Positions 41,733 to 64,000 of a DNA stretch of 64,000 nucleotides are shown here, in pieces. The notes below the pieces were generated by a model. That model worked only from the letters and a program-made list of their open reading frames with translations. It did no database searches and was not told the DNA's origin. Position numbers and translations under genes: made by a program. Numbering within the stretch: the stretch's first letter is position 1; each line of letters begins with the position of its first letter. Location of the stretch: positions 248,001-312,000 of the IMG/VR virus record IMGVR_UViG_3300034072_000758. The stretch is one strand, 5' to 3'.

Positions 41733-42113
41733 TCATTTGTAAGTCAACAATAGGTAAGAAAGAAAATCCCAAGCGGATTCGTCATCTGCCTCCGTATTAT
41801 AAATGTATGTTAATTTATCCATTCGTAGAAAAACAGAATTTCCACCCAACACTGTATATTGTGGATTGAAACCAGAGACATCCCACCCAATTACTATATA
41901 GGCGAACTGTTTCCCGTTTATGATGATGTGTAGCGAAAGGCTATCCGCGCGCTGGAACTGGTATACAAGTATGGGATGTCCGTGATAATTGACATCCCAT
42001 ACATTTTGTTTGACCTCGACAAGGTTTTCCTTACTCAAGCGCCATAGGTCTTGAACAAAAAATACCCAAGCCTCTTGGAGATTATAATTTTTGCTGACTT
42101 GTAACATATACAC
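41733..42113 (-). CDS. Hypothetical protein, C-terminal tail family
   Basis: Ends DDESAWDFLSYLLLTYK. Confidence 0.55.
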   Translation of the reverse strand: MYMLQVSKNYNLQEAWVFFVQDLWRLSKENLVEVKQNVWDVNYHGHPILVYQFQRADSLSLHIIINGKQFAYIVIGWDVSGFNPQYTVLGGNSVFLRMDKLTYIYNTEADDESAWDFLSYLLLTYK

Positions 42114-42966
42114 GGCACCCCATGATGATGCTATCGTAGTAACGTTGGCGGAAATCTTCGAGTTTTTTGTTCAGATGGAATCCACCGAACGGAAGCTCGT
42201 ATTTGAAACGGTTACGAAAGATGTTGTCCATGAACAGTTGCGGGTCGCCCAGCTTGCCGATAGTTTCACCGATTTTCATAATTTCGGGGATCGTCGGCTC
42301 ATATGCCAACCGAGCGATAAGTTCGATCTGATCATAATTGGCACCGATCATGGTATAATCGTTCACTTCCCCGGAAAACAGGAGGTCACCAGATGGAACG
42401 GCTTCTATGATCGATTGTGGCACACCGAGTTCCCGTGCCATTTGATAAACTTCGGACTTGTGAAGATGGCTGATCAGATAGAGGTCTTGAGCGGCGTCCG
42501 ACGCTTTGCCCCAGAAACCGAGGTAGGCGGCTTCATCGAAATTGGCCGTACCGACCACGACCGGTTTAAGGCCGTAGCAACGATATTCGGCAGCGACACC
42601 ATAGAAGATGGCGTTACGGATGATCGGAAGGGCGGCTTCGTTCATCGCACCTTCGGTCATGTCACAGTTCAGACGACCATCGGAAAGAACCGTGCCGAAG
42701 GGGAACTGGAAATTGACCGTCTTGGGCGTGGCGTTGCGGAAGATTTCGCAGAACTCGCGCGTATTGTTCCCGGCCTTGCTGGAATAGGTTTGGTTTGGAG
42801 CATTGGCGCAGACGAGAATGACGCGGATGCCAGCTTCGGACAGGATAGCCGCTGTGACGGCGCTGTCGATACCGCCTGAAAAGCCGACGATGGCCGTGTT
42901 CAGATCGCGGTCTTTGAACCATTGCTTTGTGAGACCTATGATATTTTCGCGCACTAGAATGCTCAT
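42082..42966 (-). CDS. nadE: NH3-dependent NAD+ synthetase
   Basis: VGFSGGIDSAV, VVGTAN..E...GFWGK..D, LHKSEVY..A..LGVP.SII...PSGDL. Confidence 0.9.
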   Translation of the reverse strand: MSILVRENIIGLTKQWFKDRDLNTAIVGFSGGIDSAVTAAILSEAGIRVILVCANAPNQTYSSKAGNNTREFCEIFRNATPKTVNFQFPFGTVLSDGRLNCDMTEGAMNEAALPIIRNAIFYGVAAEYRCYGLKPVVVGTANFDEAAYLGFWGKASDAAQDLYLISHLHKSEVYQMARELGVPQSIIEAVPSGDLLFSGEVNDYTMIGANYDQIELIARLAYEPTIPEIMKIGETIGKLGDPQLFMDNIFRNRFKYELPFGGFHLNKKLEDFRQRYYDSIIMGCRVYVTSQQKL

Positions 42967-43081
42967 AGAAAATGCTCCTATATTATTTCGATCTTTCTTT
43001 CATAGCATAGATTTCAAAAATGTAAAGTCATCTTGATTTACTTAATGATGTTTTGTATAATAGGTTAATGGAGAATTAAAT

Positions 43082-43540
43082 ATGTTTGATCTGAATGGTA
43101 TATTGCCTGAGAGCTATCCCAATATATTGATAAAACTTACCGATCTTATGGATATTCCTGTATTAGTTGACGCTATTGAAAATATAGATAATGATTCAAA
43201 AACTATTCCAATGATGCTTCATTTGAGAGTGGGTGGGGCCTATGATCGCATGATTGCTTATTATTTCGACGCGATCAGAAATCTTCAAAAAACGGACAAA
43301 GAAATAGCATCTATGTTCGCTATCTCTTTAAAAGACGTATATTCTATGCGAGCGGGTATTTTTGAAGCGTGTCTGAAACGAGCGATACCCATGCTCTACC
43401 ATGACTATTTCCAACACAATAGGAGTGGTTGCGAATGGAGCTTCGAAACTTCCTACAGAAGGAAACTTATCGATACAAACTTGCGCAACCCTCACGCATT
43501 GTATATAAATAGCTTCATTCGTTTCCACAGGTACGCCTAA
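43082..43540 (+). CDS. Hypothetical protein with a possible HTH
   Basis: TDKEIASMFAISLKDVY; TTGATT..TATAAT promoter and GGAG RBS. Confidence 0.55.
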   Translation: MFDLNGILPESYPNILIKLTDLMDIPVLVDAIENIDNDSKTIPMMLHLRVGGAYDRMIAYYFDAIRNLQKTDKEIASMFAISLKDVYSMRAGIFEACLKRAIPMLYHDYFQHNRSGCEWSFETSYRRKLIDTNLRNPHALYINSFIRFHRYA

Positions 43541-43548
43541 ATATTCCC

Positions 43549-43839
43549 ATGAGAGACATCCTAAACAAACTGAGCGGCTTAACCGAAAGTGAATCCTTGA
43601 CGCACGAGGATAAGAAATACGTATGCTATACGGAAGATAGCAACGGCAATCAGCTATCTCAATTTTATGGCGATGCTATCAACGATCTTCTCAAAGAAGC
43701 CCTTCGTTCGGATGACTCTGTTCATGTTGTGACTATATTCCGCAATGAGAATAACGAACACGTTGCTACTTATACTCGCACGGACGCGCCAACTCTTCGT
43801 GGTGATGGCTGGGAACTGATTAAACAAAATATTGGTTGA
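43549..43839 (+). CDS. Leader-bearing small late protein
   Basis: CCTAAATA-TTCCC-ATG; MRDILNKLSGLTE. Confidence 0.65.
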   Translation: MRDILNKLSGLTESESLTHEDKKYVCYTEDSNGNQLSQFYGDAINDLLKEALRSDDSVHVVTIFRNENNEHVATYTRTDAPTLRGDGWELIKQNIG

Positions 43840-43886
43840 TTTCGTAGACTAAGCTTTCTATAGTCTTCCCACTATAGGAGTTCAGA

Positions 43887-44615
43887 ATGTCAGATACCGA
43901 GGTTAGCCCATCGCATTGGATGCTTGAGCCAGATGCTCGCATTTTCAAGCACATAGGCTATGATCTCAATCCTTCCAAAATGCGAATGATGATGGAGTTT
44001 GCCGAGAACTTCAACCAATCAAAATTCAATGATGGTAAGCATGTATCTGGGCGCGATCTGATCTTTAATTTTTTCAGCATACCCGATAAAAGCGTTCGTG
44101 CCGAGATTGGTGATGAATTGCTCAACTTTATCATTGGGCCGTGTGCCGAACGCTATAAGGTCAACAATGACCTGAAACTGTTCACCGATCTTGTCAAATT
44201 TCCTCTTCTATACACACTCGTGGAAGTCTTGTCTCTTGGGCTTCTTCCAACAAGTGCTCGTAAAGACTTCTATCCAAAATTCCTCGATCTGGGAGATACG
44301 TTCTCCCCGGAGATTCCCAATATCGAAATGGGGCCGTTGGGGCTTGTCGTCAATCCCGATCCGCTATGGGAAGCGCGAACACAGGTCTTCGGGCTTCTCG
44401 CCGAGGTATGCGCACCGATCTTTGATGAAGCTGGGTCCGGGGAGATTGCTGAGATCGCCCGCAAGATCATCGCTGATAACCCGGCGCAAGCGGACAAGGC
44501 CAGAGAGGATCAAAAGCTGGTGGGATGGTTCATGGGCCAAGTCATGAAACAGCTTAAGACCAAGACCGATCCTAACGCTGTTCGAGCGGTCGTAATCGAA
44601 GAGTTGTCCAAATGA
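43887..44615 (+). CDS. Protein with C-terminal GatB/YqeY tRNA-binding domain
   Basis: IIADNP......KLVGWFMGQVMK......DP..V. Confidence 0.75.
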   Translation: MSDTEVSPSHWMLEPDARIFKHIGYDLNPSKMRMMMEFAENFNQSKFNDGKHVSGRDLIFNFFSIPDKSVRAEIGDELLNFIIGPCAERYKVNNDLKLFTDLVKFPLLYTLVEVLSLGLLPTSARKDFYPKFLDLGDTFSPEIPNIEMGPLGLVVNPDPLWEARTQVFGLLAEVCAPIFDEAGSGEIAEIARKIIADNPAQADKAREDQKLVGWFMGQVMKQLKTKTDPNAVRAVVIEELSK

Positions 44616-44986
44616 AGATAGGCGATGTGGAAGCCGATACGGCGTTCTGGGTAAGATTTTGGAACGTTACTCCGACAGAGGGATACCTAAAACACTGGAA
44701 TGGTAGAACGATCCGCCTGATAAAAGCGCGTCACCAGATGCGAGACAGCATAGGGATGTATTCTTTCTATTATCGTCTCGATCTCCATATTTACGGGATG
44801 ATGCGTTGCTATGTATCTTGGAATACAAGGCGCGTGTTGCCCGGTGTTGATCATCCGTCAATTGAGTTTTATGGCCCGACGCCCATTGAGAAAAATTTCA
44901 AGAAATCTTGGATAAAATTCTACAAGGACTGTAATGTCAACGAAGTTCAAGACATCATGGTTATGGCTATGATGGGTATACTTTAA
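44612..44986 (+). CDS. Hypothetical protein, C-terminal tail family
   Basis: Ends EVQDIMVMAMMGIL. Confidence 0.6.
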   Translation: MKIGDVEADTAFWVRFWNVTPTEGYLKHWNGRTIRLIKARHQMRDSIGMYSFYYRLDLHIYGMMRCYVSWNTRRVLPGVDHPSIEFYGPTPIEKNFKKSWIKFYKDCNVNEVQDIMVMAMMGIL

Positions 44987-45032
44987 CCCTTGCTTAATTC
45001 CAAAACGCTTGATTTAACAGAGGGTCTTGTGG

Positions 45033-45065
45033 TATAAATACTGTACGGCCCTTAAGGCCGTTTTT
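45033..45065 (+). promoter_or_regulatory. Late promoter TATAAATA followed by a short hairpin and T tract, upstream of the RF1-like gene
   Basis: TATAAATA 45033-45040; ACGGCC-CTTAA-GGCCGT-TTTT. Confidence 0.55.
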
Positions 45066-45078
45066 ATGGAGTATCACG

Positions 45079-45762
45079 ATGAAGTATAATATCGAGATTC
45101 GCTCCGCCGAAGGTGGGAGCGATAGTCAGCTTTTCGTAGCTGATCTGGCCAATGCTTATGCCAAACTCTTCAACTCGAAGGGTTGAAAGCACCGTGTCGT
45201 AAAAGAGAGACCGAGCGACACAGGTTTCTTCGAAATCACCATAGAGGTCAATGGTGAAAATCTCAAACAATTAAAGAATGAAGCTGGTGGACACCGTATC
45301 CAACGTGTTCCACCAACGGAAAAACGTGGCCGGGTACATACCAGTACCGTAACGGTCGCGGTGATCGATGCTGACCAGACGCAGGATACTGCCGACGAAC
45401 AGTTCGAATACCGTTGGTTCTCAGGCACCGGGGCTGGTGGTCAACACCGTAACAAGCACCAGAACTGCCTAGAGCTTACACACGTCGCCACAGGCATCAA
45501 ACAGAGCGCCCACGGGCGTTGTCGAGAAAGCAACAAGCGTGAGGCTCTGGACGCCATCAGGGCGAAGCTACAGAGCCATTATGCGGGTCAGTTTGGTGTC
45601 AAGAAGAATACGGATCGTTCCAGTCAGATCGGATCGGGAATGCGCGGGGACAAGCGCCGCACATATCGTTTCCAAGATGATTCGGTGGTCGATCATGAAA
45701 CCAATAAAGCCACGTCCTGCCGGTCTCTAATGAAGGGGAAGTTTGACGAGCTTTGGTCCTAA
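45079..45762 (+). CDS. RF1-like peptide chain release factor lacking domain 1, with in-frame TGA at codon 36
   Basis: GGAG RBS; MKYNIEIRSAEGGSDSQLF...YAKLFNSKG*KHR...EAGGHRIQRVPPTEKRGRVHTSTVTVAV...GAGGQHRNK...KRRTY; TGA at 45184-45186. Confidence 0.85.
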
Positions 45763-47125: not shown

Positions 47126-47146
47126 TACTCGCCCCTAAAATGACTT

Positions 47147-47303: not shown

Positions 47304-47837
47304 ATGATCGATTTAGAAAAGATACAGGAATCCCAACACCTTTTGGATGTTCTTCTACAGATGGAAGACGTTCTCGACTCGTTGGATTTGTACGTTTTTG
47401 AGAACTGGTATAATGGCGAGATCATTGATGGTCCGAACATCAAGAGATACTGGCTCGATTTCACGTTAAAATACGCATGGGACAAGCAACCAGACGATAA
47501 AGCTGCTTATCGTCTTATGAAACATGGTATTCGTGTATCCTTTGATAAGATGAGATATTCTAAGGGTAAGGAAGAACCGGAGATCGTTGAAGATGAAGAC
47601 GATGAAGAAAAGGTATTTCTTGCTGTAAAGATCAGTATACCTCGTATGCTTTGCGTACAAATTGCCGACGAAGAACTTGACTTCTACGATGAAGAAATTG
47701 ATGCGGAGGACGTTTCTGACGCTAAGGACTCTGACATCGAGAGTGAAGACGAATATTATGGAGACCAAGAAGGCGACGATGATATGAACGCCGACGCAGA
47801 AGGAGAGGCCCCAGATGACCAAGAAAAACCTCAGTGA
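47304..47837 (+). CDS. Acidic late protein of unknown function
   Basis: AATAAATA-TGTGT-ATG; LDSLDLYVFENW..GEII.GP...RYW. Confidence 0.75.
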   Translation: MIDLEKIQESQHLLDVLLQMEDVLDSLDLYVFENWYNGEIIDGPNIKRYWLDFTLKYAWDKQPDDKAAYRLMKHGIRVSFDKMRYSKGKEEPEIVEDEDDEEKVFLAVKISIPRMLCVQIADEELDFYDEEIDAEDVSDAKDSDIESEDEYYGDQEGDDDMNADAEGEAPDDQEKPQ

Positions 47838-49383
47838 GGGCCTAAGACGTGGTGATCTGGAAGACCAAGTTCTTCCTATGATCTCCTTCGATGAATATGA
47901 AAGCAACTTCGGCGACACCGCCCTGACTATCGCTTTTTATATTCATGGTAAGGACGCCGCGACCGACTTCAACAAATTTCTCCAAAAGTCTCACGTAAAC
48001 TTCCTCACGACCGATATTTCGCCATCGCAGGATAAGGACGGTTACTACGCTGTATTTGTCGAGTTCAAGATCGATGACAAGCTTATCGCCAACTTCTTTG
48101 ACATCATCGAAGAGGTAAATAACCTCACCCTGATCGAAGAATGGCAAATCCACTTGAATAACCGCGAACTCATGGCTCTCTCAAAAAAAGCCTTGGAGTT
48201 CTATATCCACGCCAAGTACGAGCGCGTGATCATGAAGGAAGATGTTCAAGAAGATACCAGCGTCGAACAAAAGGCCAAGGCATTCATTGTTAAAAATTTA
48301 GAACACCTCAGCAAGTATTATTCCCTACGTGATTTCAAGAGTGAAGACGCCGCGCGCGAGTTCTATTTTAACTCCTTGGAAAAGGACGATAAATCACCTT
48401 GGGTTCAAGCCATGCCAAGTAGTTTCCACGGTACTGAACTGAATAAGGCAATTAGTCTACTTGTGCCAATCTACAAGGCTGGTAAGAATTTCCGTATCGG
48501 CAAAGCTCCAAAGAAAGTTGCTAGAGACCCTTGGGCCGAAATTGATGTCACCACACCAAGCCTCGCGCCATTACAGTCTGTAGGCATTCTGAACCCATTC
48601 GACGGCTATAAAGTGAAGGGTGTGAAGATGCTCTCGATCAACGATATTAATATGACAGAAGACCATAGTTATACTACTGGTGGAGTCAAAAAAGTCGAAT
48701 GGTTGGCCGAGAAGATTAAAGAGAATGGGAAATTTACGGCCATTATCGTGAACCAAGATTATTCTATTTTGGACGGGCATCACCGTTTTAGAGCCATTCG
48801 TGATTATCTGCGTTACAAGACCATTCCCGCGCTGGTAATCGAAATCAATGACGGAACCAACGAAAGCTATCTGATCGAAGGCTCTGGGGAAGAAGTGACT
48901 TTTGAAAATGTTCACATTGATTTTCATCACGATCAACATGATTATGAATTACGTGCCATCATTCTGGGTAAAGTTGTTGGCTATATACGCTATGTCGTTT
49001 ATCAGGACGAAGTTCACCTCAGCATGATCAAGGTCCACGAGGATTACCGTCGCAAGGGAATAGCTACACAACTGGTGAAGCATCTACAAAAGATGTTCCC
49101 CAATACTGAAATACAAAAGGGTTCAATGACCGATGATGGTTCAAAGCTGTTTGGTGTCTTGCCAACTCATACTGTCGTTGATCCTAATTATGCGCCCAAG
49201 TTCAAGCGCCACGAAGAAGTCAAGAATATGTTAAAGAAATATTCCGATGACTTTGAGGCAATGTCGGATAAGTCAACCTTTATGGATACTCACTCGGATT
49301 GGAATGATCTCCACGACGAAAACGACAAGTTAGATCAAGAGCTTTACGGTAAAAAACCAACAAAAACAATATTTAAGGTGTAA
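47815..49383 (+). CDS. Multidomain late protein: N-terminal domain, ParB-like and GNAT
   Basis: MTKKNLSE; ILDGHHRFRA (ParB); IKVHEDYRRKGIATQL (GNAT). Confidence 0.75.
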   Translation: MTKKNLSEGLRRGDLEDQVLPMISFDEYESNFGDTALTIAFYIHGKDAATDFNKFLQKSHVNFLTTDISPSQDKDGYYAVFVEFKIDDKLIANFFDIIEEVNNLTLIEEWQIHLNNRELMALSKKALEFYIHAKYERVIMKEDVQEDTSVEQKAKAFIVKNLEHLSKYYSLRDFKSEDAAREFYFNSLEKDDKSPWVQAMPSSFHGTELNKAISLLVPIYKAGKNFRIGKAPKKVARDPWAEIDVTTPSLAPLQSVGILNPFDGYKVKGVKMLSINDINMTEDHSYTTGGVKKVEWLAEKIKENGKFTAIIVNQDYSILDGHHRFRAIRDYLRYKTIPALVIEINDGTNESYLIEGSGEEVTFENVHIDFHHDQHDYELRAIILGKVVGYIRYVVYQDEVHLSMIKVHEDYRRKGIATQLVKHLQKMFPNTEIQKGSMTDDGSKLFGVLPTHTVVDPNYAPKFKRHEEVKNMLKKYSDDFEAMSDKSTFMDTHSDWNDLHDENDKLDQELYGKKPTKTIFKV

Positions 49384-49935: not shown

Positions 49936-50239
49936 GAGAACGTTTATTCACAATTCGCACTGTGGTGTAGATTGGGATAGTAAATATCCCAACAATAATT
50001 CCAATCGCAAGGACCGCTGGGGCGAGCATTCCGAACAAGAACGCACCGAGAGTGGTTACCAGAGAGCATAAAATAGAATCTCCAATAGGAGTTTTTTTAA
50101 GACATTTCTTTTGATCTACGTAAAACAAGTAGAAGAAAATATTGAATGCTATAAACACGAGAATAAGGACCAAGGGCATATTACCGAAGAATAGACCCAA
50201 CCATTTAATCATGATAGCGAAGGGGTTCTCCATATACAT
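49913..50239 (-). CDS. Membrane protein
   Basis: Hydrophobic helices. Confidence 0.6.
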   Translation of the reverse strand: MYMENPFAIMIKWLGLFFGNMPLVLILVFIAFNIFFYLFYVDQKKCLKKTPIGDSILCSLVTTLGAFLFGMLAPAVLAIGIIVGIFTIPIYTTVRIVNKRSLNLVKPK

Positions 50240-50745
50240 TAAATAGCCTCACCAGCAATCAACTTATCATAGAGCTTTTGTTCGAGTACGAATACCTCTA
50301 CTTGGGTCTTACACCCGACTTCACAATCCTTGATGATCTCGGAAATGACTTTCCAATCGCCGCCACCCAGACCCGCGCCGATTAATGGGATGCGAACTAC
50401 CAATTCGGCAGCATTGGCAAACTGGCAGACATCGCTCATAGCTTTAGCAACAGCAACGTAATTGACCTGACGACGATTCGTGCCCGTATTTTGTTGGGTA
50501 ATACAGTTGGCAATTAGGACTTCATTTTCAGGGTTGCCATCATTGTGATGGTAGTACACCACCTCGCCAAGTTTCAAGCCGTTCTTTTGGTGCCAGCGGG
50601 AATATTCCGAAAAACATGCGGGAAATTGATCCTTGATCGCCTTAGCGATCCCCGAACCCATCACACCTAGAGCATTACACCCGTGCGCGATCAAACCGCC
50701 TCTGATGTTTTCGGGAGCAAGAAGATTGCCGTGGTAATAGAGCAT
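50239..50745 (-). CDS. Macrodomain (ADP-ribose processing) protein
   Basis: GNLL...IAHGCNALGVMGSGIAKAIK...PLIGAGLGGGDW. Confidence 0.9.
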   Translation of the reverse strand: MLYYHGNLLAPENIRGGLIAHGCNALGVMGSGIAKAIKDQFPACFSEYSRWHQKNGLKLGEVVYYHHNDGNPENEVLIANCITQQNTGTNRRQVNYVAVAKAMSDVCQFANAAELVVRIPLIGAGLGGGDWKVISEIIKDCEVGCKTQVEVFVLEQKLYDKLIAGEAI

Positions 50746-54971: not shown

Positions 54972-57026
54972 TTATGATAGACCTTCTTCGTAAGTGGTAA
55001 AGTCGTTCTCTTTGCGGACCATTAGGACATTGTTGATACGCGCTGTCAAGTCGTCTTTGTGGCTGATCAAGAAAATAGATTTACCGCCTTCTCTTGACAT
55101 TGTTTTCAAAATAGCCAGCGCCGCTTCGACACCACTTGTATCCGTACCTTGATCCAAGATTTCGTCCACAAACATCAAGTTGACTTTTTCATTCATAGCT
55201 TCCCAAACATCGCGGAACGCCCAAGATGTAGCCATGATTACACGATTCATTTCACCTCTGGACAATTGCTCAAAGTCGTAATCACGACCTACTTGAGAAA
55301 TCTCGACAGTGAGATCGGACATGAAACGCACTTGGTGTGGAAGGCCCAGCTTTTCCAAGTAGTGAGACATACGATAGTTGAGGTGGTGAATGTTCTGATC
55401 GATGATCTTCTTACGGATAAAGCTGTCCTTGTTGGTTAATAACTTCAACAGGAACTCTTGATGCTTCAAGAGCAATTCCGCATCATTCAAGCCCTCATAA
55501 TCGATCTCTTGAAGCGTAGCGGTCAAGGTCTCGATCTGGTAGGTATTCGGATTGTCTTTCGCGCTTTCGGTCTCGTAATCCTTAACTAGATTATCTACAG
55601 TCTGTTTAGTCTGGTAGATTTCATCCTTGGACGAGAAAATGAGTTGTGGCTTATCACCCAGACCAGCAAGTCGATCATTCAAGATTTGAATACCCGCATT
55701 CAGATCAGCAAGTTCGGTTATTTTTTCGATCAGCGATTGCTCGACCATAACTCGATTAGCTTCTTGCTCAGAAGCCTTCGTGGCAGCTTCTTCCGTGATT
55801 TGCTTGATTTCCGCTTGGATGTTGACGATTTCGTTTTCAAAAGCAGTTTTCTTACCTTCTAGCGAAACAAGGTCTTTTTCTAAAGCGACCAGACTTGCGG
55901 ACATATTCTCGATAACGGATGCTAAGTGATCCGTACCTTCAAGGTTCTGGCCGCAACAAACGCATACCTGATCATCCGCATTTTCGATGTCGGCAGCAAC
56001 CTTGGCGAACTCAACAGCTTTGTTTTCCATTGCCGTTTCGGTAGCGGCGATGTCACGCTTCTTACGAGCAATTTCATTCTCAAGACGGGTGATCTGCGGA
56101 TCGGAACCCCCAGAGGTCACGGTTTTGATCTGAGAGTTCAGGAGAGCAATTTCACGCTGGGTGACTTGGATCGACTTTTGCAGGTTGACCTTTTCCTGTT
56201 CAATAGTCGCGGCGGCAGAAACCCATGCCTGATAATCGTCGTATTTCTTAAGTTCGCCATCAAAATCGATTTCCGAGAAGGCAGCAATATCCTGTTCAAG
56301 TTGTGTCAGGCGGGAGGCATGTGTGCGGTCCCATTGATCGCGGCTTATTTCGAGAGCCTTGATAGATGTGCTAATATGAGCATTCGATTCTGTCTTGGCG
56401 CGAATGACAGCCTGTATATTTTTGATGTCGTCCTTTGTAGCCGTGATTTCTGTTTTCAATGACGCGGCGCGGGTTGAAATTTGAGAAATGGCGATCAGTT
56501 CTTCAATCACTTCACGTTGTTCAGCGGCCTTCATTTGAAGAAATGGCGTGGTATGAGTATTCAACGCAATCAGATGACGGAAGAGATTATAACTCATACC
56601 AACGGCGCGCTCAATCTCTTCTTGAGTATGACGGTTTTCACCTAAAGCGTTGTCTTCTTCGGTATCGTAGTCTTGTTTCTGATCGTTGATAAAGAAACGC
56701 AGAACATTCGGCTTGCGGCCTCGCTCAATACGGTACACGACATCACCCTTTTCAAACTCAAGAGTGACAATCATGTTTTTCGTATTGATATTGTTGATCA
56801 GGTTGTCTTTCTTGATGTTCGAGATCGGCGAGCCGTACAGAGCATAAGAAATTGCCTGAATGATAACCGACTTACCCACGCCGTTGCGCGAGATACCCGA
56901 ACCATTGGAAGTGTCCTTGTTTTCTCCCAGAACAAGCGTAAGACCTTTTTTGTCCAAGGTAATCGCCGTGGTGACGTTACCGACAGACAAGAAGTTTTTC
57001 ATGGAAATGTTGAGAATATTAAGCAT
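54972..57026 (-). CDS. Recombination nuclease ATPase subunit (T4 gp46/SbcC/Rad50-like)
   Basis: KNFLSVGN, NGVGKS, coiled coil with CVCCGQ hook, LSRGE, VDEILD, LISH. Confidence 0.95.
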   Translation of the reverse strand: MLNILNISMKNFLSVGNVTTAITLDKKGLTLVLGENKDTSNGSGISRNGVGKSVIIQAISYALYGSPISNIKKDNLINNINTKNMIVTLEFEKGDVVYRIERGRKPNVLRFFINDQKQDYDTEEDNALGENRHTQEEIERAVGMSYNLFRHLIALNTHTTPFLQMKAAEQREVIEELIAISQISTRAASLKTEITATKDDIKNIQAVIRAKTESNAHISTSIKALEISRDQWDRTHASRLTQLEQDIAAFSEIDFDGELKKYDDYQAWVSAAATIEQEKVNLQKSIQVTQREIALLNSQIKTVTSGGSDPQITRLENEIARKKRDIAATETAMENKAVEFAKVAADIENADDQVCVCCGQNLEGTDHLASVIENMSASLVALEKDLVSLEGKKTAFENEIVNIQAEIKQITEEAATKASEQEANRVMVEQSLIEKITELADLNAGIQILNDRLAGLGDKPQLIFSSKDEIYQTKQTVDNLVKDYETESAKDNPNTYQIETLTATLQEIDYEGLNDAELLLKHQEFLLKLLTNKDSFIRKKIIDQNIHHLNYRMSHYLEKLGLPHQVRFMSDLTVEISQVGRDYDFEQLSRGEMNRVIMATSWAFRDVWEAMNEKVNLMFVDEILDQGTDTSGVEAALAILKTMSREGGKSIFLISHKDDLTARINNVLMVRKENDFTTYEEGLS

Positions 57027-57031: not shown

Positions 57032-58048
57032 TTACATATTTTTCAGAGTGTTGTAGATAGCAATAAGCTTCTGGCTTTGAATGTCTTTGCTAGTGATACT
57101 ATTCAGACCTTCAATTACGATCTGATCAATCGACTGATAATCGACGTTTTCTTCAAACTCAGCGGCTTCAACCGATACCGCTTGCGGAACCAATTCCAGC
57201 TTACGAAGCCCATAGTTTTTGATGAACTCTTCCTTGATGACCTGAGACTCTTCATATGTAATGTCAAAGTCTATGGCGACCCGTGCCGACATCTTTTGCT
57301 TGAGCATTTCATTAGGCTTATTGATCATGTCGCTAAGACGCATGGTTCGGAACAACGGTTGTTCATCCCAAGCCTTAAAGATGGGGTCTTTACCCCATTC
57401 CAACATCATAATCCCACGGTCCTGATCCCAAGCATCCGAATAGTTGAATGGAAAAGTATTACCAATATAGACCACGTTCTTCTTTTGCTGGCGGATGTGG
57501 AAGTGTCCAGAGAATACATATTCTTGGTTCACAAACGAACTATGAGTAACCGAGTGACCAGTCTCAGGCATGACGACTTTCGCGTTCATCATAAAGCCAC
57601 CCATTTCCAAATGACCAAATGCATAGCGTGTCTTGATATTCGGAAGCTTCTTGTGTTCGTCCCCGACCAGCCAAGGCAACAAAAGAACATCGTCCATGAC
57701 TGTGGGTTCGGTAATTACCTTGATGTTGGGAAGAAGCTTGGCGAACTCGACCGACGACAGGTCGCGCTTATCACGATAGAACAGATCGTGGTTGCCGGGA
57801 AGCCAGATTACATTGAAGGCTTCGTTGAGCTTTTCCATACCACGAAGGCCGTAGTGGAGCGTCGAAACGGCAACAGAGTGGCGATTATCAAAGTAATCAC
57901 CACAGAAGATCATGGTTTCAGCGCCCCACGTTTTCCCCTGTTCAATAGCCCAATCGATAAACTCTAAGTTATCAAGATTAGCTTGGGGCGAATTACCCGT
58001 TCTACCAAAGTGAATATCAGTAAAAGAAATGGCTTTCTTAAAGAGCAT
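57032..58048 (-). CDS. Recombination nuclease subunit (T4 gp47/SbcD/Mre11-like)
   Basis: TDIHFG, GDYFDNR, GNHD, GHLE, SGHFH. Confidence 0.95.
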   Translation of the reverse strand: MLFKKAISFTDIHFGRTGNSPQANLDNLEFIDWAIEQGKTWGAETMIFCGDYFDNRHSVAVSTLHYGLRGMEKLNEAFNVIWLPGNHDLFYRDKRDLSSVEFAKLLPNIKVITEPTVMDDVLLLPWLVGDEHKKLPNIKTRYAFGHLEMGGFMMNAKVVMPETGHSVTHSSFVNQEYVFSGHFHIRQQKKNVVYIGNTFPFNYSDAWDQDRGIMMLEWGKDPIFKAWDEQPLFRTMRLSDMINKPNEMLKQKMSARVAIDFDITYEESQVIKEEFIKNYGLRKLELVPQAVSVEAAEFEENVDYQSIDQIVIEGLNSITSKDIQSQKLIAIYNTLKNM

Positions 58049-59817: not shown

Positions 59818-59822
59818 AAAAG

Positions 59823-59850
59823 AAAAAGCCTCCCAACCGGGAGGCTTTTT
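59823..59850. terminator. Bidirectional intrinsic terminator
   Basis: AAAAAGCCTCCC-AACC-GGGAGGCTTTTT between convergent genes. Confidence 0.9.
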
Positions 59851-60638: not shown

Positions 60639-60661
60639 TACAATTCCTCGGCAAGAATCTA

Positions 60662-60707
60662 TAGTATAGTTAATTAACTATACTAAATCAATATTTTTAT
60701 TGATTTA
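60662..60707. promoter_or_regulatory. Divergent promoter region with a 24-bp perfect palindrome
   Basis: TAGTATAGTTAATTAACTATACTA; minus strand TTGATT-N17-TATACT. Confidence 0.7.
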
Positions 60708-60751
60708 AAATGGAAGTGTGTTATTTATTAATCATACGTTGAGGAGGATTC

Positions 60752-61294
60752 ATGCGCGAGCCATTGATCAGCATTATTTTAGCCACCGATCTGAAATTGG
60801 GTATCGGTAAGGACGGTAAGTTGCCGTGGCATATTCCAGAGGACATGAAATGGTTCAGGACCATGACGAAAGACAAAATCGTCATCATGGGTTGGAAGAC
60901 TTGGGAAAGCCTCGCATTTCAGCCTCTTAAGGGACGGTTGAATGTTATCGTCACCTCTCGCAAAGAAACACCACAAGAAGAGTGGCTGACCGCTATCACA
61001 ATCTTTGTGAAGTCGATTGCCGATGCTCTAGCCGTAACCAAAATGAACGGTCATCCAGAAGCGGTCTTCATTGGTGGCGCTGTGTTGTGGGAGAGCTTAT
61101 TCGCAGACTATGTGGTAGACCGTATGTATATCACCGAAGTTCAAGGCGAATATGATTGTGATACGTTCTTCGACTACGTTGGTCGGGGAACCAAGCTCAC
61201 CAAATTCCAGTATGTCGCCAAGACAGATCGTTGTACATTTGCGATTGTGACGGACCCGGATAAGTTCGACAGGTTTCCGTCTATTCAGTATTAA
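60752..61294 (+). CDS. folA: Dihydrofolate reductase
   Basis: GIGKDGKLPWHIPEDMKWF, IMGWKTWESL, PLKGRLN, FIGG, CDTFF. Confidence 0.95.
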   Translation: MREPLISIILATDLKLGIGKDGKLPWHIPEDMKWFRTMTKDKIVIMGWKTWESLAFQPLKGRLNVIVTSRKETPQEEWLTAITIFVKSIADALAVTKMNGHPEAVFIGGAVLWESLFADYVVDRMYITEVQGEYDCDTFFDYVGRGTKLTKFQYVAKTDRCTFAIVTDPDKFDRFPSIQY

Positions 61295-61322
61295 AAAAGC
61301 CGCCCCGAAGGGCGGCTTTTTT
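61293..61322. terminator. Bidirectional intrinsic terminator
   Basis: AAAAAAGCCGCCC-CGAA-GGGCGGCTTTTTT. Confidence 0.9.
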
Positions 61323-61945
61323 TAAATTATCTTGACGTTTGGTACGCCAGCATATTCCTCGGCGAGAACCTGATCGATGTCGCGGACGATACCCTTGACC
61401 AGATCGCGCTTGATGGTGACGTTAAAGCCGCGCTTGACGAAGCCTTCGACCGCCCAATGGACGCAGAAGTCAGCCGCCACGCCGACGATTTCGATGTCGG
61501 TAACACCGCTTTGTTTCAGACGGTCGAACATGGTTTCTGCCAGTTCAATACCATTATTCGCCAGCGTAAGGTCTGGGTCGGTCGGGTCTTCATTGAAATC
61601 CGACACCATGAATTGCTTCCACCACATACCGAAGACATCTTTTTCCAGACGATACATCGGAAGATCGGTATTCAGCGCAGTCGGATTGTCGATGACCAGT
61701 TGCCAGCCCCAAGTCGGCTTGACGCAGTGAATGCCGAATTGTTTGGCTTCTTCCGAGTCGGCATATTCTTCGGGATCATGTGTGTCGAAAGTCCAGAGGA
61801 CGCCTTGCGTTGTCTCTGGACGCAGGGCCTTAATATAGTTGGCCAGAGGCGCGATCAGCGAATCAGCACCAGCCACGGCCAGTGCGCCGGTTTGCGCGAT
61901 GAAGTCATTTTGTGCGTCGATGACTACGACGAATTTCTTACCCAT
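61322..61945 (-). CDS. pncA: Nicotinamidase
   Basis: VIDAQNDF..GALAV, DTH, HCV..T.G, K, VGVAADFCV. Confidence 0.9.
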   Translation of the reverse strand: MGKKFVVVIDAQNDFIAQTGALAVAGADSLIAPLANYIKALRPETTQGVLWTFDTHDPEEYADSEEAKQFGIHCVKPTWGWQLVIDNPTALNTDLPMYRLEKDVFGMWWKQFMVSDFNEDPTDPDLTLANNGIELAETMFDRLKQSGVTDIEIVGVAADFCVHWAVEGFVKRGFNVTIKRDLVKGIVRDIDQVLAEEYAGVPNVKII

Positions 61946-61956
61946 TGTCTTTCCCC

Positions 61957-63201
61957 TCATACTTTCACAGGAATGTTTGTTTGGCCTTCGGTTCCGAAGA
62001 CACGGCGATAGCGGTCAATTTCCGAAGGCTGACCGATGGCCTTTAAATAGTTGTCCGACAGCTTCACCGCGCTGCGGCCATTGACCGTCTTGAGTTTACA
62101 AACGATACTCATGGCCTTCTTGCCAGCGGCACGGAAGTCGTTGGTGAAGTTGGTTCCCCAGCCGAAACCGAGGTTGACACGTTCCGCGAAATAGTCACGA
62201 AGTTCAACCATATCCGTTCCGTTCAAAACGTAGGTGTCGTTGTTGTCCGAAACGTCCACGTCCAGCCCATCGGCGAAAATGACAGTCTTTTCCTGCGGAT
62301 TGCGGTCATTTTCCAACCACCACTTAATTAATTCTTCGCCAGCCACATAGGCGTCCTTGGAGTCTGGACGAATTGATGGCCAATCCAGAAGATATTCTGG
62401 CGCATCCTTGAGGAACTGGCTGGTTCCGTAAGTATCGGGAAGAATGGTACGGCGATCCGGGTACATTTCGCCCCAGAGTTCAGTAACCTTGTAAGGCGAA
62501 TGTTTGAGGTCTTCGTCCGTTTCGGCTAATGCGGCTTGCGCCATCGGAAGCTCATGGGCGTTGGTGCCAACGGCTTTCAGGTTATATTTCATGGCAAAAT
62601 AAACGTTCGATGTGCCGACGATGACGCCGTAATCCACCGCCATGCGGATCGCGCGGTCTTGCCAAGCGAACGAATGGCGGCGGCGGGTGCCCATATCAGC
62701 AAAGACCACCTTGTTTTCTTGAAGGCGTTGAAGCTTCTGATGAAGAATGAACGCCGCGACTTCTTGATCATCATCTTCCTTCGATGGATCGGGATCGACC
62801 GAGGCCATTTCATTGATGATAGCAAGAACGTAGATTTCCCAAAGGGTCGTCTGTTCGATAGGACCGGTGAACGTAATTTCGTACTGGCCTTCTTCGGTCT
62901 TCGACGGGACAATGGCGAAGCTGACCTTATCAAAGTTGAAGGTCTTGAGCCATTTCAGAAAGTCCTTGTCGAAGTTGCCCTGCGAACCAATGTAGGCGAT
63001 TTCAGCCGGTGTGAACCGGAGATCGTAGAGTGAATTGATTTCGAGGCTCAAATGCTCTATATCGACCAGATCAGCCAGCTTGATTCCTTTGGAACGATTA
63101 GTAACCGCCCAAGTCGAAACCGTGCCACGAAGATGCTTCCAGTGATATTGGAGCATGGTGAACTTGTACAAATCATTGTCTGCGAGTGTCGTGATAATCA
63201 T
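61957..63201 (-). CDS. pncB: Nicotinate phosphoribosyltransferase
   Basis: DNDLYKFTMLQ, DMGTRRRHSF.WQ, GTSNV, GTNAHE, LPDTYG, RPDS, FGWGTNFTND, VKLSDN..KA.G. Confidence 0.92.
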   Translation of the reverse strand: MIITTLADNDLYKFTMLQYHWKHLRGTVSTWAVTNRSKGIKLADLVDIEHLSLEINSLYDLRFTPAEIAYIGSQGNFDKDFLKWLKTFNFDKVSFAIVPSKTEEGQYEITFTGPIEQTTLWEIYVLAIINEMASVDPDPSKEDDDQEVAAFILHQKLQRLQENKVVFADMGTRRRHSFAWQDRAIRMAVDYGVIVGTSNVYFAMKYNLKAVGTNAHELPMAQAALAETDEDLKHSPYKVTELWGEMYPDRRTILPDTYGTSQFLKDAPEYLLDWPSIRPDSKDAYVAGEELIKWWLENDRNPQEKTVIFADGLDVDVSDNNDTYVLNGTDMVELRDYFAERVNLGFGWGTNFTNDFRAAGKKAMSIVCKLKTVNGRSAVKLSDNYLKAIGQPSEIDRYRRVFGTEGQTNIPVKV

Positions 63202-63205
63202 GGCC

Positions 63206-64000
63206 TTAGTCCCTCGCCAGATGCTTGTTTTTTTGGATCATCAGATAATGATCCTCGAACATGATGCGGGGATCGACTTCATCCAGAGGAACCCACTTTG
63301 CTTTTTTGGCGTCGTCAGCCGCCTTGATTTTCGGGAGACCGAACGCCTTAATAAGACGCTTGTTGAACGAAGCGTTACTTTCGCCGCGTTCGGGCTTGGG
63401 AGCCGTAGGAACGAGGTGATAGATCGTCGCTTGTGTGATGGTGCGCAGACGGGTAGAGCGATAAGGATTGTCTTCCAGAGACACGCCCTTGATCGCGCCA
63501 CGAAGAACAGCGGTCGGCACGTCGATCTTGGTTTCTTCGATCAGTTCACGCATAGAACCGTCAATGAACGTTTCATTGCGGTTCAAGTGGCCACCCGGAA
63601 GCGCCCACAAATTTTTGCCGGGAAACGATTTACGTTGAACCAGAAGGATATGGCCGGACTGAATGACGATGTTATCCACAGTCACGAAGTTTGGCGGATA
63701 CGGAGACGAATCCCATTGTGCCAGATAGTTCTTCATGAACACGAACTCTTCGTGTTGTTCCTTGTACGCAGCCGTGGACAAAAAGTCCGCCATGTACTGC
63801 GCCGCGCCATCACCGATATGCTCCGCATCGATAAAGCCCGTTTCCAGATACTTGTCGCGCAAGGGCGTGGCGCTCAGACCAATGTTGTTGAGTGGAGAGG
63901 TCCAGCATTCCGCATTGATGCTTTCCCATTGCGGGAACAGTTTCAGATAGAAACTGGTATTGTCCTTCGAGTGGCCGATCAAGGTCACACGCTCGGCGCT
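63206..64000 (-). CDS. Bifunctional NMN/NaMN adenylyltransferase-Nudix hydrolase (NadM-Nudix), 5' end outside window
   Basis: LIGHSKD.TSFYL.LFPQW, SAT..R, PYPPNFVTVD, WALPGG....ET......RELIEET, AADDA..A.W, MFEDH. Confidence 0.88.
   Translation of the reverse strand, partial: SAERVTLIGHSKDNTSFYLKLFPQWESINAECWTSPLNNIGLSATPLRDKYLETGFIDAEHIGDGAAQYMADFLSTAAYKEQHEEFVFMKNYLAQWDSSPYPPNFVTVDNIVIQSGHILLVQRKSFPGKNLWALPGGHLNRNETFIDGSMRELIEETKIDVPTAVLRGAIKGVSLEDNPYRSTRLRTITQATIYHLVPTAPKPERGESNASFNKRLIKAFGLPKIKAADDAKKAKWVPLDEVDPRIMFEDHYLMIQKNKHLARD

What the first reader, a model, noticed from the sequence alone, without database searches (positions are those of the whole stretch)
42082..64000. Complete deamidating NAD+ salvage route on a phage
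Seen: an operon of NadM-Nudix, PncB and PncA (61322-64000) plus a separate NadE (42082). Established chemistry: nicotinamide to nicotinate (PncA), to NaMN (PncB), to NaAD (adenylyltransferase), to NAD+ (NadE), with the Nudix domain recycling ADP-ribose. The described phage NAD reconstitution pathways (NARP1, NARP2) use amidated routes without PncA, PncB or NadE. Inference: this is a distinct route that counters NAD-depleting defences (Thoeris, SIR2, TIR types) and/or fuels the phage's many ARTs.
Basis: partly seen in the sequence, partly recalled or inferred. Interest (0 to 1): 0.68.

Follow-up and report, generated by a model that had tools for sequence, protein, structure and literature searches.

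The report
Phage nicotinamide-to-NAD salvage via nicotinate
A 517-kb soil or subsurface phage carries the enzymes to rebuild NAD+ from nicotinamide through nicotinate, a gene set that recurs in many giant phages and has been noted in surveys but never tested as a counter to NAD-destroying bacterial defences.

Summary
They form a tight minus-strand operon, nadM-Nudix > pncB > pncA (64318 to 61322), which starts 318 bases beyond the window end. A separate NadE-family gene lies at 42082-42966.

The genome is a complete 516.8-kb phage. It has no NAMPT, PnuC, NadD or PRPP synthetase.

Two corrections:
- **The last step.** It is a canonical two-domain, glutamine-dependent enzyme. In related phages its ortholog sits directly after pncA, so it is the likelier final enzyme. 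The window's short NadE belongs to a separate jumbo-phage clade that normally travels with NAMPT, NadM and a prolyl-hydroxylase-like oxygenase.
- **Novelty.** The route is not unique. Of 25 viral PncB loci with enough flank, 20 carry PncA, PncB, an NMNAT and NadE together. So do the cultured phages Phosso and Atu_ph07. A 2024 survey already reported Preiss-Handler gene sets in jumbo phages.

The route is not NARP1, NARP2 or NARP3, and none of 17 large PncB phage records has NAMPT. A counter-defence role is plausible but untested. Two questions stay open: whether NadM accepts NaMN, and whether the short NadE makes NMN instead.

The parts
63206..64000 (-). nadM-Nudix: a bifunctional NMN/NaMN adenylyltransferase plus ADP-ribose pyrophosphatase, and the first gene of the operon. 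Only the C-terminal 264 codons are in the window. The start codon is at window-equivalent 64318 (L002:4318).
   Evidence: NF003786 scores 372.1 bits against a cut-off of 397. PDB 2QJO (Synechocystis NadM-Nudix) 4.7e-58; 2QJT (Francisella NadM) 1.3e-53. The motif GRFQPFHKGH (HxGH), an ISxT-like LSATPLR, and the Nudix box GHLNRNETFIDGSMRELIEETKI can be read in the translation. It is the only NMNAT-type gene in the genome; the second CTP_transf_like hit is PPAT-like.
61957..63201 (-). pncB: ATP-dependent nicotinate phosphoribosyltransferase (nicotinate + PRPP to NaMN).
   Evidence: PF17767 NAPRTase_N 5e-26 and PF04095 2.4e-36. NF003704 372.5 bits (cut-off 379); TIGR01514 253.8 bits (cut-off 269.55). 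PDB 1YBE (A. tumefaciens NAPRTase) 8e-85. The GTNAHELPM motif is conserved across 11 homologs. It is the only PF04095 hit in the genome, so there is no NAMPT.
61322..61960 (-). pncA: nicotinamidase (nicotinamide to nicotinate + NH3). Its start codon overlaps the pncB stop (ATGA).
   Evidence: PF00857 52.3 bits (cut-off 27). The best PDB sequence hits are nicotinamidases: 1ILW/1IM5, 3PL1, 2H0R, 2WT9. In an alignment of 13 viral homologs, D59, H61, H78, C79 and C166 are invariant and D15 nearly so. This matches the nicotinamidase metal site (DxH...H) and the catalytic Asp and Cys. It is 47-49% identical to the genes in the same position in L049, L008 and Phosso.
61293..61323 (.). Bidirectional hairpin terminator shared by pncA (minus strand) and the convergent DHFR gene (60752-61294, plus strand).
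   Evidence: Read directly from the sequence: AAAAAA GCCGCCC CGAA GGGCGGC TTTTTTT, overlapping both stop codons. The consensus scan as a whole was not above its shuffles.
42082..42966 (-). Short single-domain NadE-family amidating synthetase. It is either an NAD synthetase or an NMN synthetase; the substrate is unresolved. It is a second paralog and probably not the operon's cognate enzyme.
   Evidence: TIGR00552 scores 84.7 bits (cut-off 63.65), but the protein falls far below the full-length equivalog cut-offs. The P-loop SGGIDS and the motifs GTxNxxE...GxxxKxxD and PSGDL are invariant in its clade. The model has pLDDT 88, and the best PDB fold hits listed are all NAD or NMN synthetases, first 3FIU. 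The clade comprises about 70 metagenomic clusters at 40-67% identity, on contigs up to 373 kb.
38797..39753 (-). Prolyl-4-hydroxylase-like 2OG-Fe(II) oxygenase. It is the conserved companion of the short NadE in other jumbo phages. Its role is unknown, and it is listed only as linked, not as a pathway enzyme.
   Evidence: PF13640 3.4e-11. It scores 190-280 bits to the oxygenase that follows the short NadE in L017-19 and L070-74, while no other neighbour is shared. Fold hits are P4H, PHD2 and EF-Tu prolyl hydroxylases.

Best explanation
The phage encodes a self-contained deamidating NAD+ salvage route. Its only outside need is PRPP.

Steps, assigned from enzyme family membership:
1. PncA converts nicotinamide to nicotinate.
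2. PncB condenses nicotinate with PRPP, using ATP, to give NaMN.
3. The adenylyltransferase half of NadM-Nudix makes NaAD.
4. An NAD synthetase amidates NaAD to NAD+. The likeliest enzyme is the two-domain glutamine-dependent NadE at G000:456063-457820, outside the window. The short NadE at 42082 is a possible second enzyme.

The Nudix half of NadM splits ADP-ribose into AMP and ribose-5-phosphate. The host's PRPP synthetase can turn ribose-5-phosphate back into PRPP. Both products of NAD cleavage are thus re-used.

nadM-pncB-pncA is one transcription unit. This is the gene logic described for Acinetobacter (a bifunctional NadM with a two-domain NadE), carried on a phage. In these phages it stands in place of NAMPT.

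Inferred role: to keep or rebuild the NAD+ pool during infection. That would include infection under NADase-type defences, and coping with the phage's own ADP-ribosyltransferases, which release nicotinamide.

Shown here: gene identities, motifs, operon structure, the conserved four-gene module and its exclusivity with NAMPT. Inferred: all substrate preferences and the biological role.
For: - Family and motif evidence for each enzyme.
- The long NadE passes the NCBIfam equivalog NF010588, 507.9 bits against 479.
- Operon anatomy: a TTGACA-17-TATAAA promoter-like site and a GGAGG ribosome-binding site upstream of nadM, a 4-nt gap, an ATGA overlap, and a hairpin terminator after pncA.
- Recurrence: of 37 non-redundant viral PncB loci, 22 have PncA, PncB, an NMNAT and NadE within 10 kb. 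Of the 25 with at least 6 kb on both sides, 20 do.
- Seven loci show the same order as here with the two-domain NadE directly downstream of pncA. Those NadE proteins score 481-533 bits to our long NadE.
- A 56%-identical PncB sits on a fragment with the same order: TK, NMNAT, Nudix, PncB, isochorismatase.
- All 17 large PncB-carrying viral records have exactly one PF04095 hit (no NAMPT) and at least one NadE.
- Precedent for NadM working with a two-domain NadE, and for bifunctional NMN/NaMN NadM enzymes: PMC3376133.
- NAD reconstitution is a proven phage counter-defence: NARP1 and NARP2 and NARP3.
Against: - No biochemical or expression data exist. The only runs holding this DNA are DNA metagenomes.
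- NadM enzymes are best known for using NMN. [quoted passage not shown]
- PncA, PncB and NadM-Nudix all fall below NCBIfam's strict equivalog cut-offs. PncB and NadM miss narrowly; PncA misses widely.
- The long NadE is 145 kb from the operon in this genome.
- No phage PRPP synthetase was found, so the route depends on host PRPP.
- The four-step route costs more ATP than NAMPT plus NadM.
- The same module occurs in phages with no detectable ART-PolyVal genes (G003, G012), so supplying ARTs cannot be its general purpose.
- The host is unknown, and so is whether it has NADase defences.
Confidence: 0.6

Rival explanations
1. Francisella-type order of steps. NaMN from PncB is amidated to NMN by the short NadE acting as an NMN synthetase. 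NadM then adenylates NMN, its usual substrate, to NAD+. NaAD is never made.
For: - The top PDB fold match of the short NadE model is 3FIU, the Francisella NMN synthetase (E 1.1e-12, TM 0.79 by target), just ahead of H. pylori NadE.
- In Francisella, replacement of NadD by NadM goes with a NadE homolog adapted to NaMN (PMC3376133).
- This genome has NadM and no NadD.
Against: - The margin over ordinary NAD synthetases is small, both by sequence (1XNG 6.8e-13 against 3FIU 1.9e-12) and by fold.
- In all 8 loci of its clade, the short NadE lies just upstream of a second, dedicated HIGH-type nucleotidyltransferase. That fits a NaMN adenylyltransferase plus NAD synthetase pair.
- Related PncB operons use the two-domain NadE and lack the short one.
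- Archaeal NadE paired with NadM proved to be a plain NAD synthetase.
Confidence: 0.2
2. The module is a general metabolic booster, not a defence-specific countermeasure. It sustains NAD+ during the long infection cycle of a very large phage. It also removes nicotinamide, a product inhibitor of the phage's own ADP-ribosyltransferases. This overlaps with the best explanation and differs only on what selects for the module.
For: - The genome holds 7 ART-PolyVal matches (5 over the cut-off), a Macro domain, a NADAR domain and 5 Nudix genes.
- The relative G009 has 8 ART matches.
- The 2024 survey reads jumbo-phage NAD genes mainly as supply for NAD-consuming phage enzymes.
- NARP2, which also draws on PRPP, overproduces NAD+ even without a defence system.
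Against: - G003 and G012 carry the module but no ART-PolyVal hit.
- This genome has no NAD-dependent ligase and no SIR2.
- The Nudix and PncA steps act on exactly the two products of NADase effectors.
Confidence: 0.35
3. The 212-aa isochorismatase-family protein is not a nicotinamidase. The phage would then run only a Preiss-Handler route from external nicotinate and could not re-use nicotinamide.
For: The Pfam score is modest (52 bits). The NCBIfam nicotinamidase equivalog scores 46 bits against a cut-off of 174. The isochorismatase superfamily contains many other hydrolases.
Against: - The best PDB sequence hits are nicotinamidases.
- The nicotinamidase-specific metal ligands (D59, H61, H78) and the catalytic Cys166 are invariant, and catalytic Asp15 nearly so, across 13 viral homologs.
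- The gene is translationally coupled to pncB.
- A PncA-family gene accompanies PncB in 35 of 46 viral loci.
Confidence: 0.07
4. The genes are bacterial DNA joined to a phage contig by misassembly, or belong to a provirus flank.
For: Bacterial PncB sequences interleave with viral ones in a quick tree. Two of the related records are classed as proviruses.
Against: - The record has direct terminal repeats and is rated 100% complete.
- The operon lies between phage genes: a T4-like portal about 6 kb away, thymidine kinase and DHFR.
- GC content is even across the window.
- The cultured phages Atu_ph07 and Phosso carry the same set.
Confidence: 0.02

Closest known systems
Preiss-Handler gene clusters of 'NAD-jumbo phages' (Microbiome 2024, PMC11662467; for example Kuafu_71 with pncB-nadD-nadE)
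   Same: These are jumbo phages that encode every enzyme of a deamidated NAD+ route, with the genes clustered. The authors proposed, without testing, that the genes supply phage NAD-consuming enzymes and counter NAD+ depletion. They also mention phage pncA genes.
   Different: The cluster described there uses NadD and starts from nicotinate. Here the adenylyltransferase is NadM-Nudix, there is no NadD, and a nicotinamidase is translationally coupled to pncB, so the route starts from nicotinamide. Those phages came from gut metagenomes with predicted Bacteroidota hosts; this one came from subsurface or soil samples. That paper's supplementary tables were not available to me.
Clusters in the cultured jumbo phages Sinorhizobium phage Phosso and Agrobacterium phage Atu_ph07
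   Same: The same four functions are present. Phosso has NadE, PncB, a Nudix protein, a NadM-type NMNAT and PncA (annotated only as 'hydrolase') within 6 kb. Atu_ph07 has a Nudix-NMNAT-PncA operon, PncB about 3 kb away, and a 561-aa-frame NadE about 90 kb away. PncB identity to ours is 42% and 39%.
   Different: In those phages the NMNAT and the Nudix protein are separate genes and the gene order differs. Phosso uses a canonical single-domain ammonia-dependent NadE (NF001979, 381 bits). In Atu_ph07 the PncA and NMNAT genes are annotated as hypothetical, and the phage also has NadR and PnuC.
NARP2 (NAMPT plus NadM-Nudix-type Nmnat, Vibrio phage KVP40), a proven anti-defence NAD+ reconstitution pathway
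   Same: It shares the NadM-Nudix enzyme, starts from nicotinamide and PRPP, and ends in NAD+.
   Different: NARP2 needs NAMPT and passes through NMN in two steps. This genome has no NAMPT. It replaces that single enzyme with PncA, PncB and an NAD synthetase, passing through nicotinate, NaMN and NaAD.
Acinetobacter NAD network, as summarised in PMC3376133
   Same: A bifunctional NMN/NaMN NadM works together with a conventional two-domain, glutamine-dependent NAD synthetase.
   Different: That is a chromosomal, dispersed, housekeeping system. Here the genes are phage-borne and three of them form one operon. I could not read the primary papers.
Francisella tularensis route (NaMN to NMN by an NMN synthetase, then NadM)
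   Same: NadM is present without NadD, alongside a short single-domain NadE homolog. 3FIU is the top fold match of the short NadE.
   Different: Francisella has no conventional NAD synthetase, whereas this phage has one. The substrate of the short NadE is unknown.

Membership tests
Nicotinamidase (PncA, isochorismatase superfamily) | Catalytic Asp-Lys-Cys triad | tested here: met
   D15 is nearly invariant and C166 invariant in 13 viral homologs. A Lys (K106, in LEKDVF) sits at the expected place in the query and its closer relatives; the distant sequences align poorly in that stretch.
Nicotinamidase (PncA, isochorismatase superfamily) | Metal-binding site DxH...H, which sets nicotinamidases apart from other isochorismatase-like hydrolases (from my knowledge of the PncA structures) | tested here: met
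   D59, H61 and H78 (in the HC motif) are invariant. They align with the DWH...HCV motif of P. horikoshii PncA.
Nicotinamidase (PncA, isochorismatase superfamily) | Score above the curated family cut-off | tested here: inconclusive
   Pfam PF00857 scores 52.3 bits, above its 27-bit cut-off. The NCBIfam equivalog NF008623 scores 46.4 bits, below its 174-bit cut-off.
Nicotinate phosphoribosyltransferase (PncB) | NAPRTase_N plus NAPRTase domains (not NAMPT_N), and the conserved GTNAHELPM His motif | tested here: met
   PF17767 and PF04095 both match. The motif is conserved in 11 homologs. The best solved relative is A. tumefaciens NAPRTase 1YBE, 8e-85.
Nicotinate phosphoribosyltransferase (PncB) | Score above the NCBIfam equivalog cut-off | tested here: not met
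   NF003704 scores 372.5 bits against 379. TIGR01514 scores 253.8 bits against 269.55. Both miss narrowly.
Nicotinate phosphoribosyltransferase (PncB) | Preference for nicotinate over nicotinamide | not testable with these tools
   Supported only by context: PncA and NadE accompany PncB in most viral loci, and NAMPT never does.
NadM-Nudix bifunctional NMNAT / ADP-ribose pyrophosphatase | HxGH and ISxT nucleotidyltransferase motifs, a C-terminal Nudix box, and full-length similarity to solved members | tested here: met
   FHKGH, LSATPLR and the Nudix box GX5EX7REUXEE are present. 2QJO matches at 4.7e-58 and 2QJT at 1.3e-53 over both domains. NF003786 scores 372.1 bits against 397, just under the cut-off.
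NadM-Nudix bifunctional NMNAT / ADP-ribose pyrophosphatase | Adenylyltransferase activity on NaMN, which the deamidated order of steps requires | not testable with these tools
   Some NadM enzymes are bifunctional and others prefer NMN (PMC3376133).
NAD+ synthetase (NadE), two-domain glutamine-dependent form | CN_hydrolase glutaminase domain plus PP-loop synthetase domain, above the equivalog cut-off | tested here: met
   The gene at G000:456063-457820 (outside the window) matches PF00795 and PF02540. NF010588 scores 507.9 bits against 479.
NAD+ synthetase (NadE), single-domain form (window gene at 42082) | PP-loop SGGxDS, NadE core motifs and NadE fold | tested here: met
   SGGIDS is present and invariant in the clade. 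TIGR00552 scores 84.7 bits against 63.65. The best fold hits listed are all NAD or NMN synthetases.
NAD+ synthetase (NadE), single-domain form (window gene at 42082) | Substrate is NaAD rather than NaMN | not testable with these tools
   Full-length equivalog models are not reached (83.4 bits against 255). The top fold hit is an NMN synthetase, by a small margin.
NARP2 | NAMPT (NadV) together with Nmnat | tested here: not met
   The genome has a single PF04095 hit, and it is PncB with a NAPRTase_N domain.
NARP1 | Adps (a PRPP-synthetase-like enzyme) plus Namat (an NAMPT-like enzyme) | tested here: not met
   There is no PF13793 hit and no second PF04095 hit.
NARP3 | PnuC transporter plus NadR | tested here: not met
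   There is no PF04973 hit. The only other HIGH-type nucleotidyltransferase is PPAT-like.

The most novel reading that the evidence does not exclude
The PncA-PncB-NadM/Nudix-NadE module is a genuine fourth phage NAD+ reconstitution pathway. It would defeat NADase defences such as Thoeris, SIR2 types and DSR. Large phages would choose it instead of NAMPT because it irreversibly removes nicotinamide, which would otherwise inhibit their own ADP-ribosyltransferases. In this reading the short NadE clade is a phage-specific enzyme, possibly an NMN synthetase, that pulls host deamidated nucleotides into the phage's NadM.
Probability: 0.3. Interest if true: 0.7.

Novelty: new member of a known kind. 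Interest (0 to 1): 0.45.

Why it matters
Rebuilding NAD+ is a proven way for phages to escape a broad class of bacterial defences. All three characterised pathways (NARP1-3) use amidated chemistry.

This work shows a conserved four-gene deamidating module in many very large phages, in two recurring arrangements. It never coexists with NAMPT in the 17 large records checked. It also breaks the published rule that phage NadM always works with NadV.

Two cultured phage-host pairs carry the module: Atu_ph07 with Agrobacterium, and Phosso with Sinorhizobium. The idea can therefore be tested directly.

The work also shows that this genome has two different NAD synthetase paralogs. One of them belongs to an undescribed jumbo-phage clade linked to a prolyl-hydroxylase-like oxygenase.

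Tried and rejected
- Megablast of the operon against GenBank phages found nothing.
- A single-protein scan of viral contigs found only one locus. An alignment was needed to reach 46.
- The primary papers on Francisella NMN synthetase, NadM-Nudix structures and Acinetobacter NAD metabolism are not held. Neither are the supplements of the NAD-jumbo-phage paper. What I say about those systems rests on PMC3376133 and my own knowledge.
- The consensus promoter and terminator scan was not above its shuffles. The promoter-like site and the terminator I report were read directly from the sequence.
- I considered that the second CTP_transf_like gene (G000:212597-213604) could be a NadD. I rejected this because it is PPAT-like.
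- I considered that the 219-aa gene after pncB in Atu_ph07 could be PncA. I rejected this because it matched only itself; the real PncA homolog lies about 4 kb upstream.
- ART families PF03496 and PF01129 gave no hit. For PF01129 no control genome matched either, so that blank says little.
- The careful PncB tree did not finish, so only a quick, midpoint-rooted tree was used. I draw only one point from it: viral and bacterial PncB sequences interleave.
- I tried to resolve NaAD against NaMN specificity of the short NadE by fold search. The result was not decisive.
- The fold of the linked oxygenase points to protein prolyl hydroxylases and gave no link to NAD chemistry.
- Not used: the large representative-protein search, read laying and complex prediction. 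No claim here rests on an absence of relatives, on read evidence or on protein binding.
- No other genetic code was needed.

Full report
**What is there**

The window is bases 248001-312000 of a 516,805-bp virus record with direct terminal repeats, rated complete. GC content is about 45% and even across the window.

- The ORF at 42082-42966 (294 aa) matches Pfam NAD_synthase (6.7e-22) and TIGR00552 (84.7 bits, cut-off 63.65).
- The ORF at 61322-61960 (212 aa) is an isochorismatase-family protein.
- The ORF at 61957-63201 (414 aa) has NAPRTase_N and NAPRTase domains (NF003704, 2.5e-111).
- The ORF that runs off the window end is a NadM-Nudix protein.

I fetched the DNA beyond the window (L002). 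The nadM gene begins at window-equivalent position 64318 with MNYDYDLAVFIGRFQPFHKGH. The full protein matches the solved Synechocystis and Francisella NadM-Nudix enzymes across both domains (4.7e-58 and 1.3e-53).

**Operon anatomy**

All features below were read from the sequence.
- A TTGACA-17-TATAAA promoter-like site and a GGAGG ribosome-binding site precede nadM. Both lie just beyond the window.
- nadM and pncB are 4 nt apart.
- The pncB stop and the pncA start overlap (ATGA).
- pncA ends in a hairpin, GCCGCCC-CGAA-GGGCGGC, flanked by A and T runs (61293-61323). The convergent DHFR gene shares this hairpin.

The general consensus scan was not above chance. These are therefore direct readings, not statistical findings.

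Neighbouring genes are phage-like: thymidine kinase, a Ros/MucR regulator, a T4-like portal, and SbcC/SbcD-like genes.

**Are the enzymes what they seem?**

- PncB: the best solved relative is the A. tumefaciens NAPRTase 1YBE (8e-85). The GTNAHELPM motif is conserved.
- PncA: this is the weakest assignment by score. However, its best PDB sequence hits are nicotinamidases. In an alignment of 13 viral homologs, the metal ligands D59, H61 and H78 and the catalytic C166 are invariant, and D15 nearly so.
- PncA, PncB and NadM all score below NCBIfam's strict equivalog cut-offs. PncB and NadM miss narrowly. I read this as divergence, not as a different function.

**What else the genome holds**

Whole-genome family scans found:
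- exactly one PF04095 gene, which is PncB, so there is no NAMPT;
- no PRPP synthetase N-domain;
- no PnuC;
- only one further HIGH-type nucleotidyltransferase, which is PPAT-like rather than NadD.

The important surprise is a second NAD synthetase. It is a 585-aa protein at G000:456063-457820 with a CN_hydrolase glutaminase domain and a synthetase domain. It passes the NCBIfam equivalog for NAD+ synthase, 507.9 bits against 479.

**Comparative evidence**

PncB homologs occur in the cultured jumbo phages Phosso (42% identity) and Atu_ph07 (39%), and in huge uncultured phages.
- Phosso has NadE, PncB, a Nudix protein, a NadM-type NMNAT and a 'hydrolase' within 6 kb. The 'hydrolase' is 48% identical to our PncA.
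- Atu_ph07 has a Nudix-NMNAT-PncA operon annotated mostly as hypothetical, with PncB nearby and a NadE in a 561-aa frame elsewhere.

A profile scan of IMG/VR returned 46 viral PncB loci, 37 of them non-redundant. I annotated their flanks with phmmer and a PncA profile.
- 35 of the 46 have a PncA-family gene within 10 kb.
- 22 of the 37 have all four functions.
- Of the 25 with at least 6 kb on both sides, 20 have all four.

Two arrangements recur.
- One is NadM-Nudix > PncB > PncA > two-domain NadE, seen in L022, L024, L033, L040, L041, L046 and L054. The first three genes are in the order seen here. The NadE that follows pncA scores 481-533 bits to our distant long NadE.
- The other is NadE > PncB ... 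stand-alone NMNAT > PncA. Most loci have a single-domain NadE; three (L027, L042, L044) have a two-domain one.

A fragment with a 56%-identical PncB shows TK, NMNAT, Nudix, PncB and isochorismatase in the same order as here.

In 17 large PncB-carrying records (137-578 kb), PF04095 hits exactly once each, and every record has at least one NAD synthetase. In these phages the deamidating set therefore stands in place of NAMPT.

A quick PncB tree shows viral and bacterial sequences interleaved, with ours on a long branch together with the 56% relative. I draw no further conclusion from it.

**The short NadE at 42082**

Its close relatives are about 70 clusters at 40-67% identity. All are metagenomic, and many lie on contigs of 130-373 kb. 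Beyond them, scores drop sharply to ordinary bacterial NadE.

In all eight loci of this clade, the gene is followed by a 2OG-Fe(II) oxygenase and then by a divergent nucleotidyltransferase of about 210 aa. In five loci this triad lies just downstream of NADAR, NadM-Nudix and NAMPT, which is a NARP2-like set.

In two complete genomes of that kind, NAMPT is the only PF04095 gene. The short NadE is the only strong NAD synthase match; G018 has one further marginal hit of 24 bits.

In our window the oxygenase ortholog is at 38797-39753, on the same strand, about 2.3 kb downstream of the short NadE. No other neighbour is shared with those loci. The third gene of the triad has no ortholog here.

The short NadE keeps the PP-loop and the NadE core motifs. 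Its model is confident (pLDDT 88). The best fold hits listed are all NAD or NMN synthetases; the Francisella NMN synthetase 3FIU is first, by a small margin. The oxygenase model resembles protein prolyl hydroxylases.

I conclude three things:
- The short NadE is an active NadE-family amidating synthetase.
- It came from a different module than the operon.
- It may serve as a second last-step enzyme or as an NMN synthetase. Its substrate cannot be settled by computation.

**Mechanism**

The best-supported route is:
1. nicotinamide to nicotinate (PncA);
2. nicotinate to NaMN (PncB, with PRPP and ATP);
3. NaMN to NaAD (NadM);
4. NaAD to NAD+ (the two-domain NadE).

The Nudix domain turns ADP-ribose into AMP and ribose-5-phosphate, and host PRPP synthetase closes the loop.

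The pairing of a bifunctional NadM with a two-domain NadE has a bacterial precedent in Acinetobacter. The alternative order, through NMN, has a precedent in Francisella (PMC3376133). Either order gives NAD+ from phage-encoded enzymes alone.

**Biological role**

NAD+ reconstitution is a demonstrated counter-defence for NARP1 and NARP2 and for NARP3.

This genome also has many NAD-consuming and ADP-ribose-handling genes: 7 ART-PolyVal matches (5 over the cut-off, 2 weak ones inside the window), a Macro domain at 50239-50745, a NADAR domain, and 5 Nudix genes.

However, the same module occurs in G003 and G012, which have no detectable ART-PolyVal gene. Supplying ARTs therefore cannot be the general reason for it. 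Counter-defence and general NAD supply remain untested and are not exclusive.

The DNA comes from subsurface and soil metagenomes, and no RNA run holds it.

**Novelty**

A 2024 study of gut jumbo phages reported that 174 of 668 encode complete salvage or Preiss-Handler routes. It cites a pncB-nadD-nadE cluster and mentions phage pncA.

An earlier survey of complete phage genomes listed only NadV, NadM and NadR. It stated that every phage with NadM also has NadV. This genome and its relatives are exceptions to that statement.

I found no paper that tests a deamidating route as an anti-defence pathway, and none that uses the name NARP4 for a phage pathway.

I therefore file this as a new member of a kind already described computationally. 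The added points are the conserved four-gene module, its exclusivity with NAMPT, the second NadE, and the short-NadE/oxygenase clade.

**Limits**

Everything about substrates and role is inference. Several primary papers and the survey's supplements were not available.

Noticed in passing
window 38797-39753 (-) with 42082-42966 (-); L017-L019 and L070-L074: A conserved triad occurs in jumbo phages: short NadE, then a prolyl-4-hydroxylase-like 2OG-Fe(II) oxygenase, then a divergent HIGH-type nucleotidyltransferase of about 210 aa. It often lies just downstream of NADAR, NadM-Nudix and NAMPT. In this genome only the first two genes remain, 2.3 kb apart. I found no description of this triad in the papers I read.
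   Followed up: partly
G000:C1:456063-457820 (+), outside the window (L016:8063-9820): A two-domain glutamine-dependent NAD+ synthetase (585 aa) that passes the NCBIfam equivalog cut-off. It is flanked by a 1773-aa protein and an SPFH/Band 7 protein.
   Followed up: yes
window 30498-31724 (+) and 7156-7539 (+); also G000 57124, 91074, 106292, 220359, 222240: The genome has seven ART-PolyVal (PF18760) matches. Five are over the cut-off. The two inside the window are weak, and the 408-aa one also matches DUF3990.
   Followed up: partly
window 50239-50745 (-): A Macro-domain protein (PF01661, 34.5 bits) lies between the short NadE and the operon. A NADAR-domain gene lies at G000:182509-183105 (-).
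   Followed up: no
window 5716-6201 (-) and G000 102021, 343763, 350777: The genome has four further stand-alone Nudix genes besides NadM-Nudix.
   Followed up: no
window 47815-49383 (+): A 522-aa protein combines a ParB N-terminal domain with a GNAT acetyltransferase domain.
   Followed up: no
window 54972-57026 (-) and 57032-58048 (-): An SbcC-like (AAA_23/SMC_N) and an SbcD-like (Metallophos) gene pair, resembling the T4 gp46/gp47 recombination nuclease.
   Followed up: no
window 43887-44615 (+): A 242-aa protein with a C-terminal GatB/YqeY domain, divergent from the short NadE gene.
   Followed up: no
L002:5121-5666 (-), 6196-6900 (+), 10420-12186 (+) (window-equivalent 65121-72186): Thymidine kinase lies upstream of nadM, as in the 56% relative L008. 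Nearby are a Ros/MucR-family regulator and a T4-like portal gene. The Ros/MucR family is, to my knowledge, typical of Alphaproteobacteria, which is a weak hint about the host.
   Followed up: no
G000:C1:212597-213604 (-): A 335-aa protein whose C-terminal 140 residues are phosphopantetheine adenylyltransferase-like, joined to an unassigned 190-aa N-terminal region.
   Followed up: partly
L007/L050 (IMGVR_UViG_3300024239_000011, 543 kb): Another megaphage has an NAD island: two-domain NadE, a LAGLIDADG endonuclease, PncB, a NADAR-nucleotidyltransferase fusion (463 aa), an ADP-ribosylglycohydrolase, a PPAT-like gene and a sigma factor.
   Followed up: partly
L003 (Atu_ph07, MF403008.1) 1350-2589 (-): Two Atu_ph07 genes annotated as hypothetical (AUZ95018, AUZ95019) are homologs of Phosso's PncA-like hydrolase and its NMNAT. 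They lie next to the annotated ADP-ribose pyrophosphatase.
   Followed up: partly
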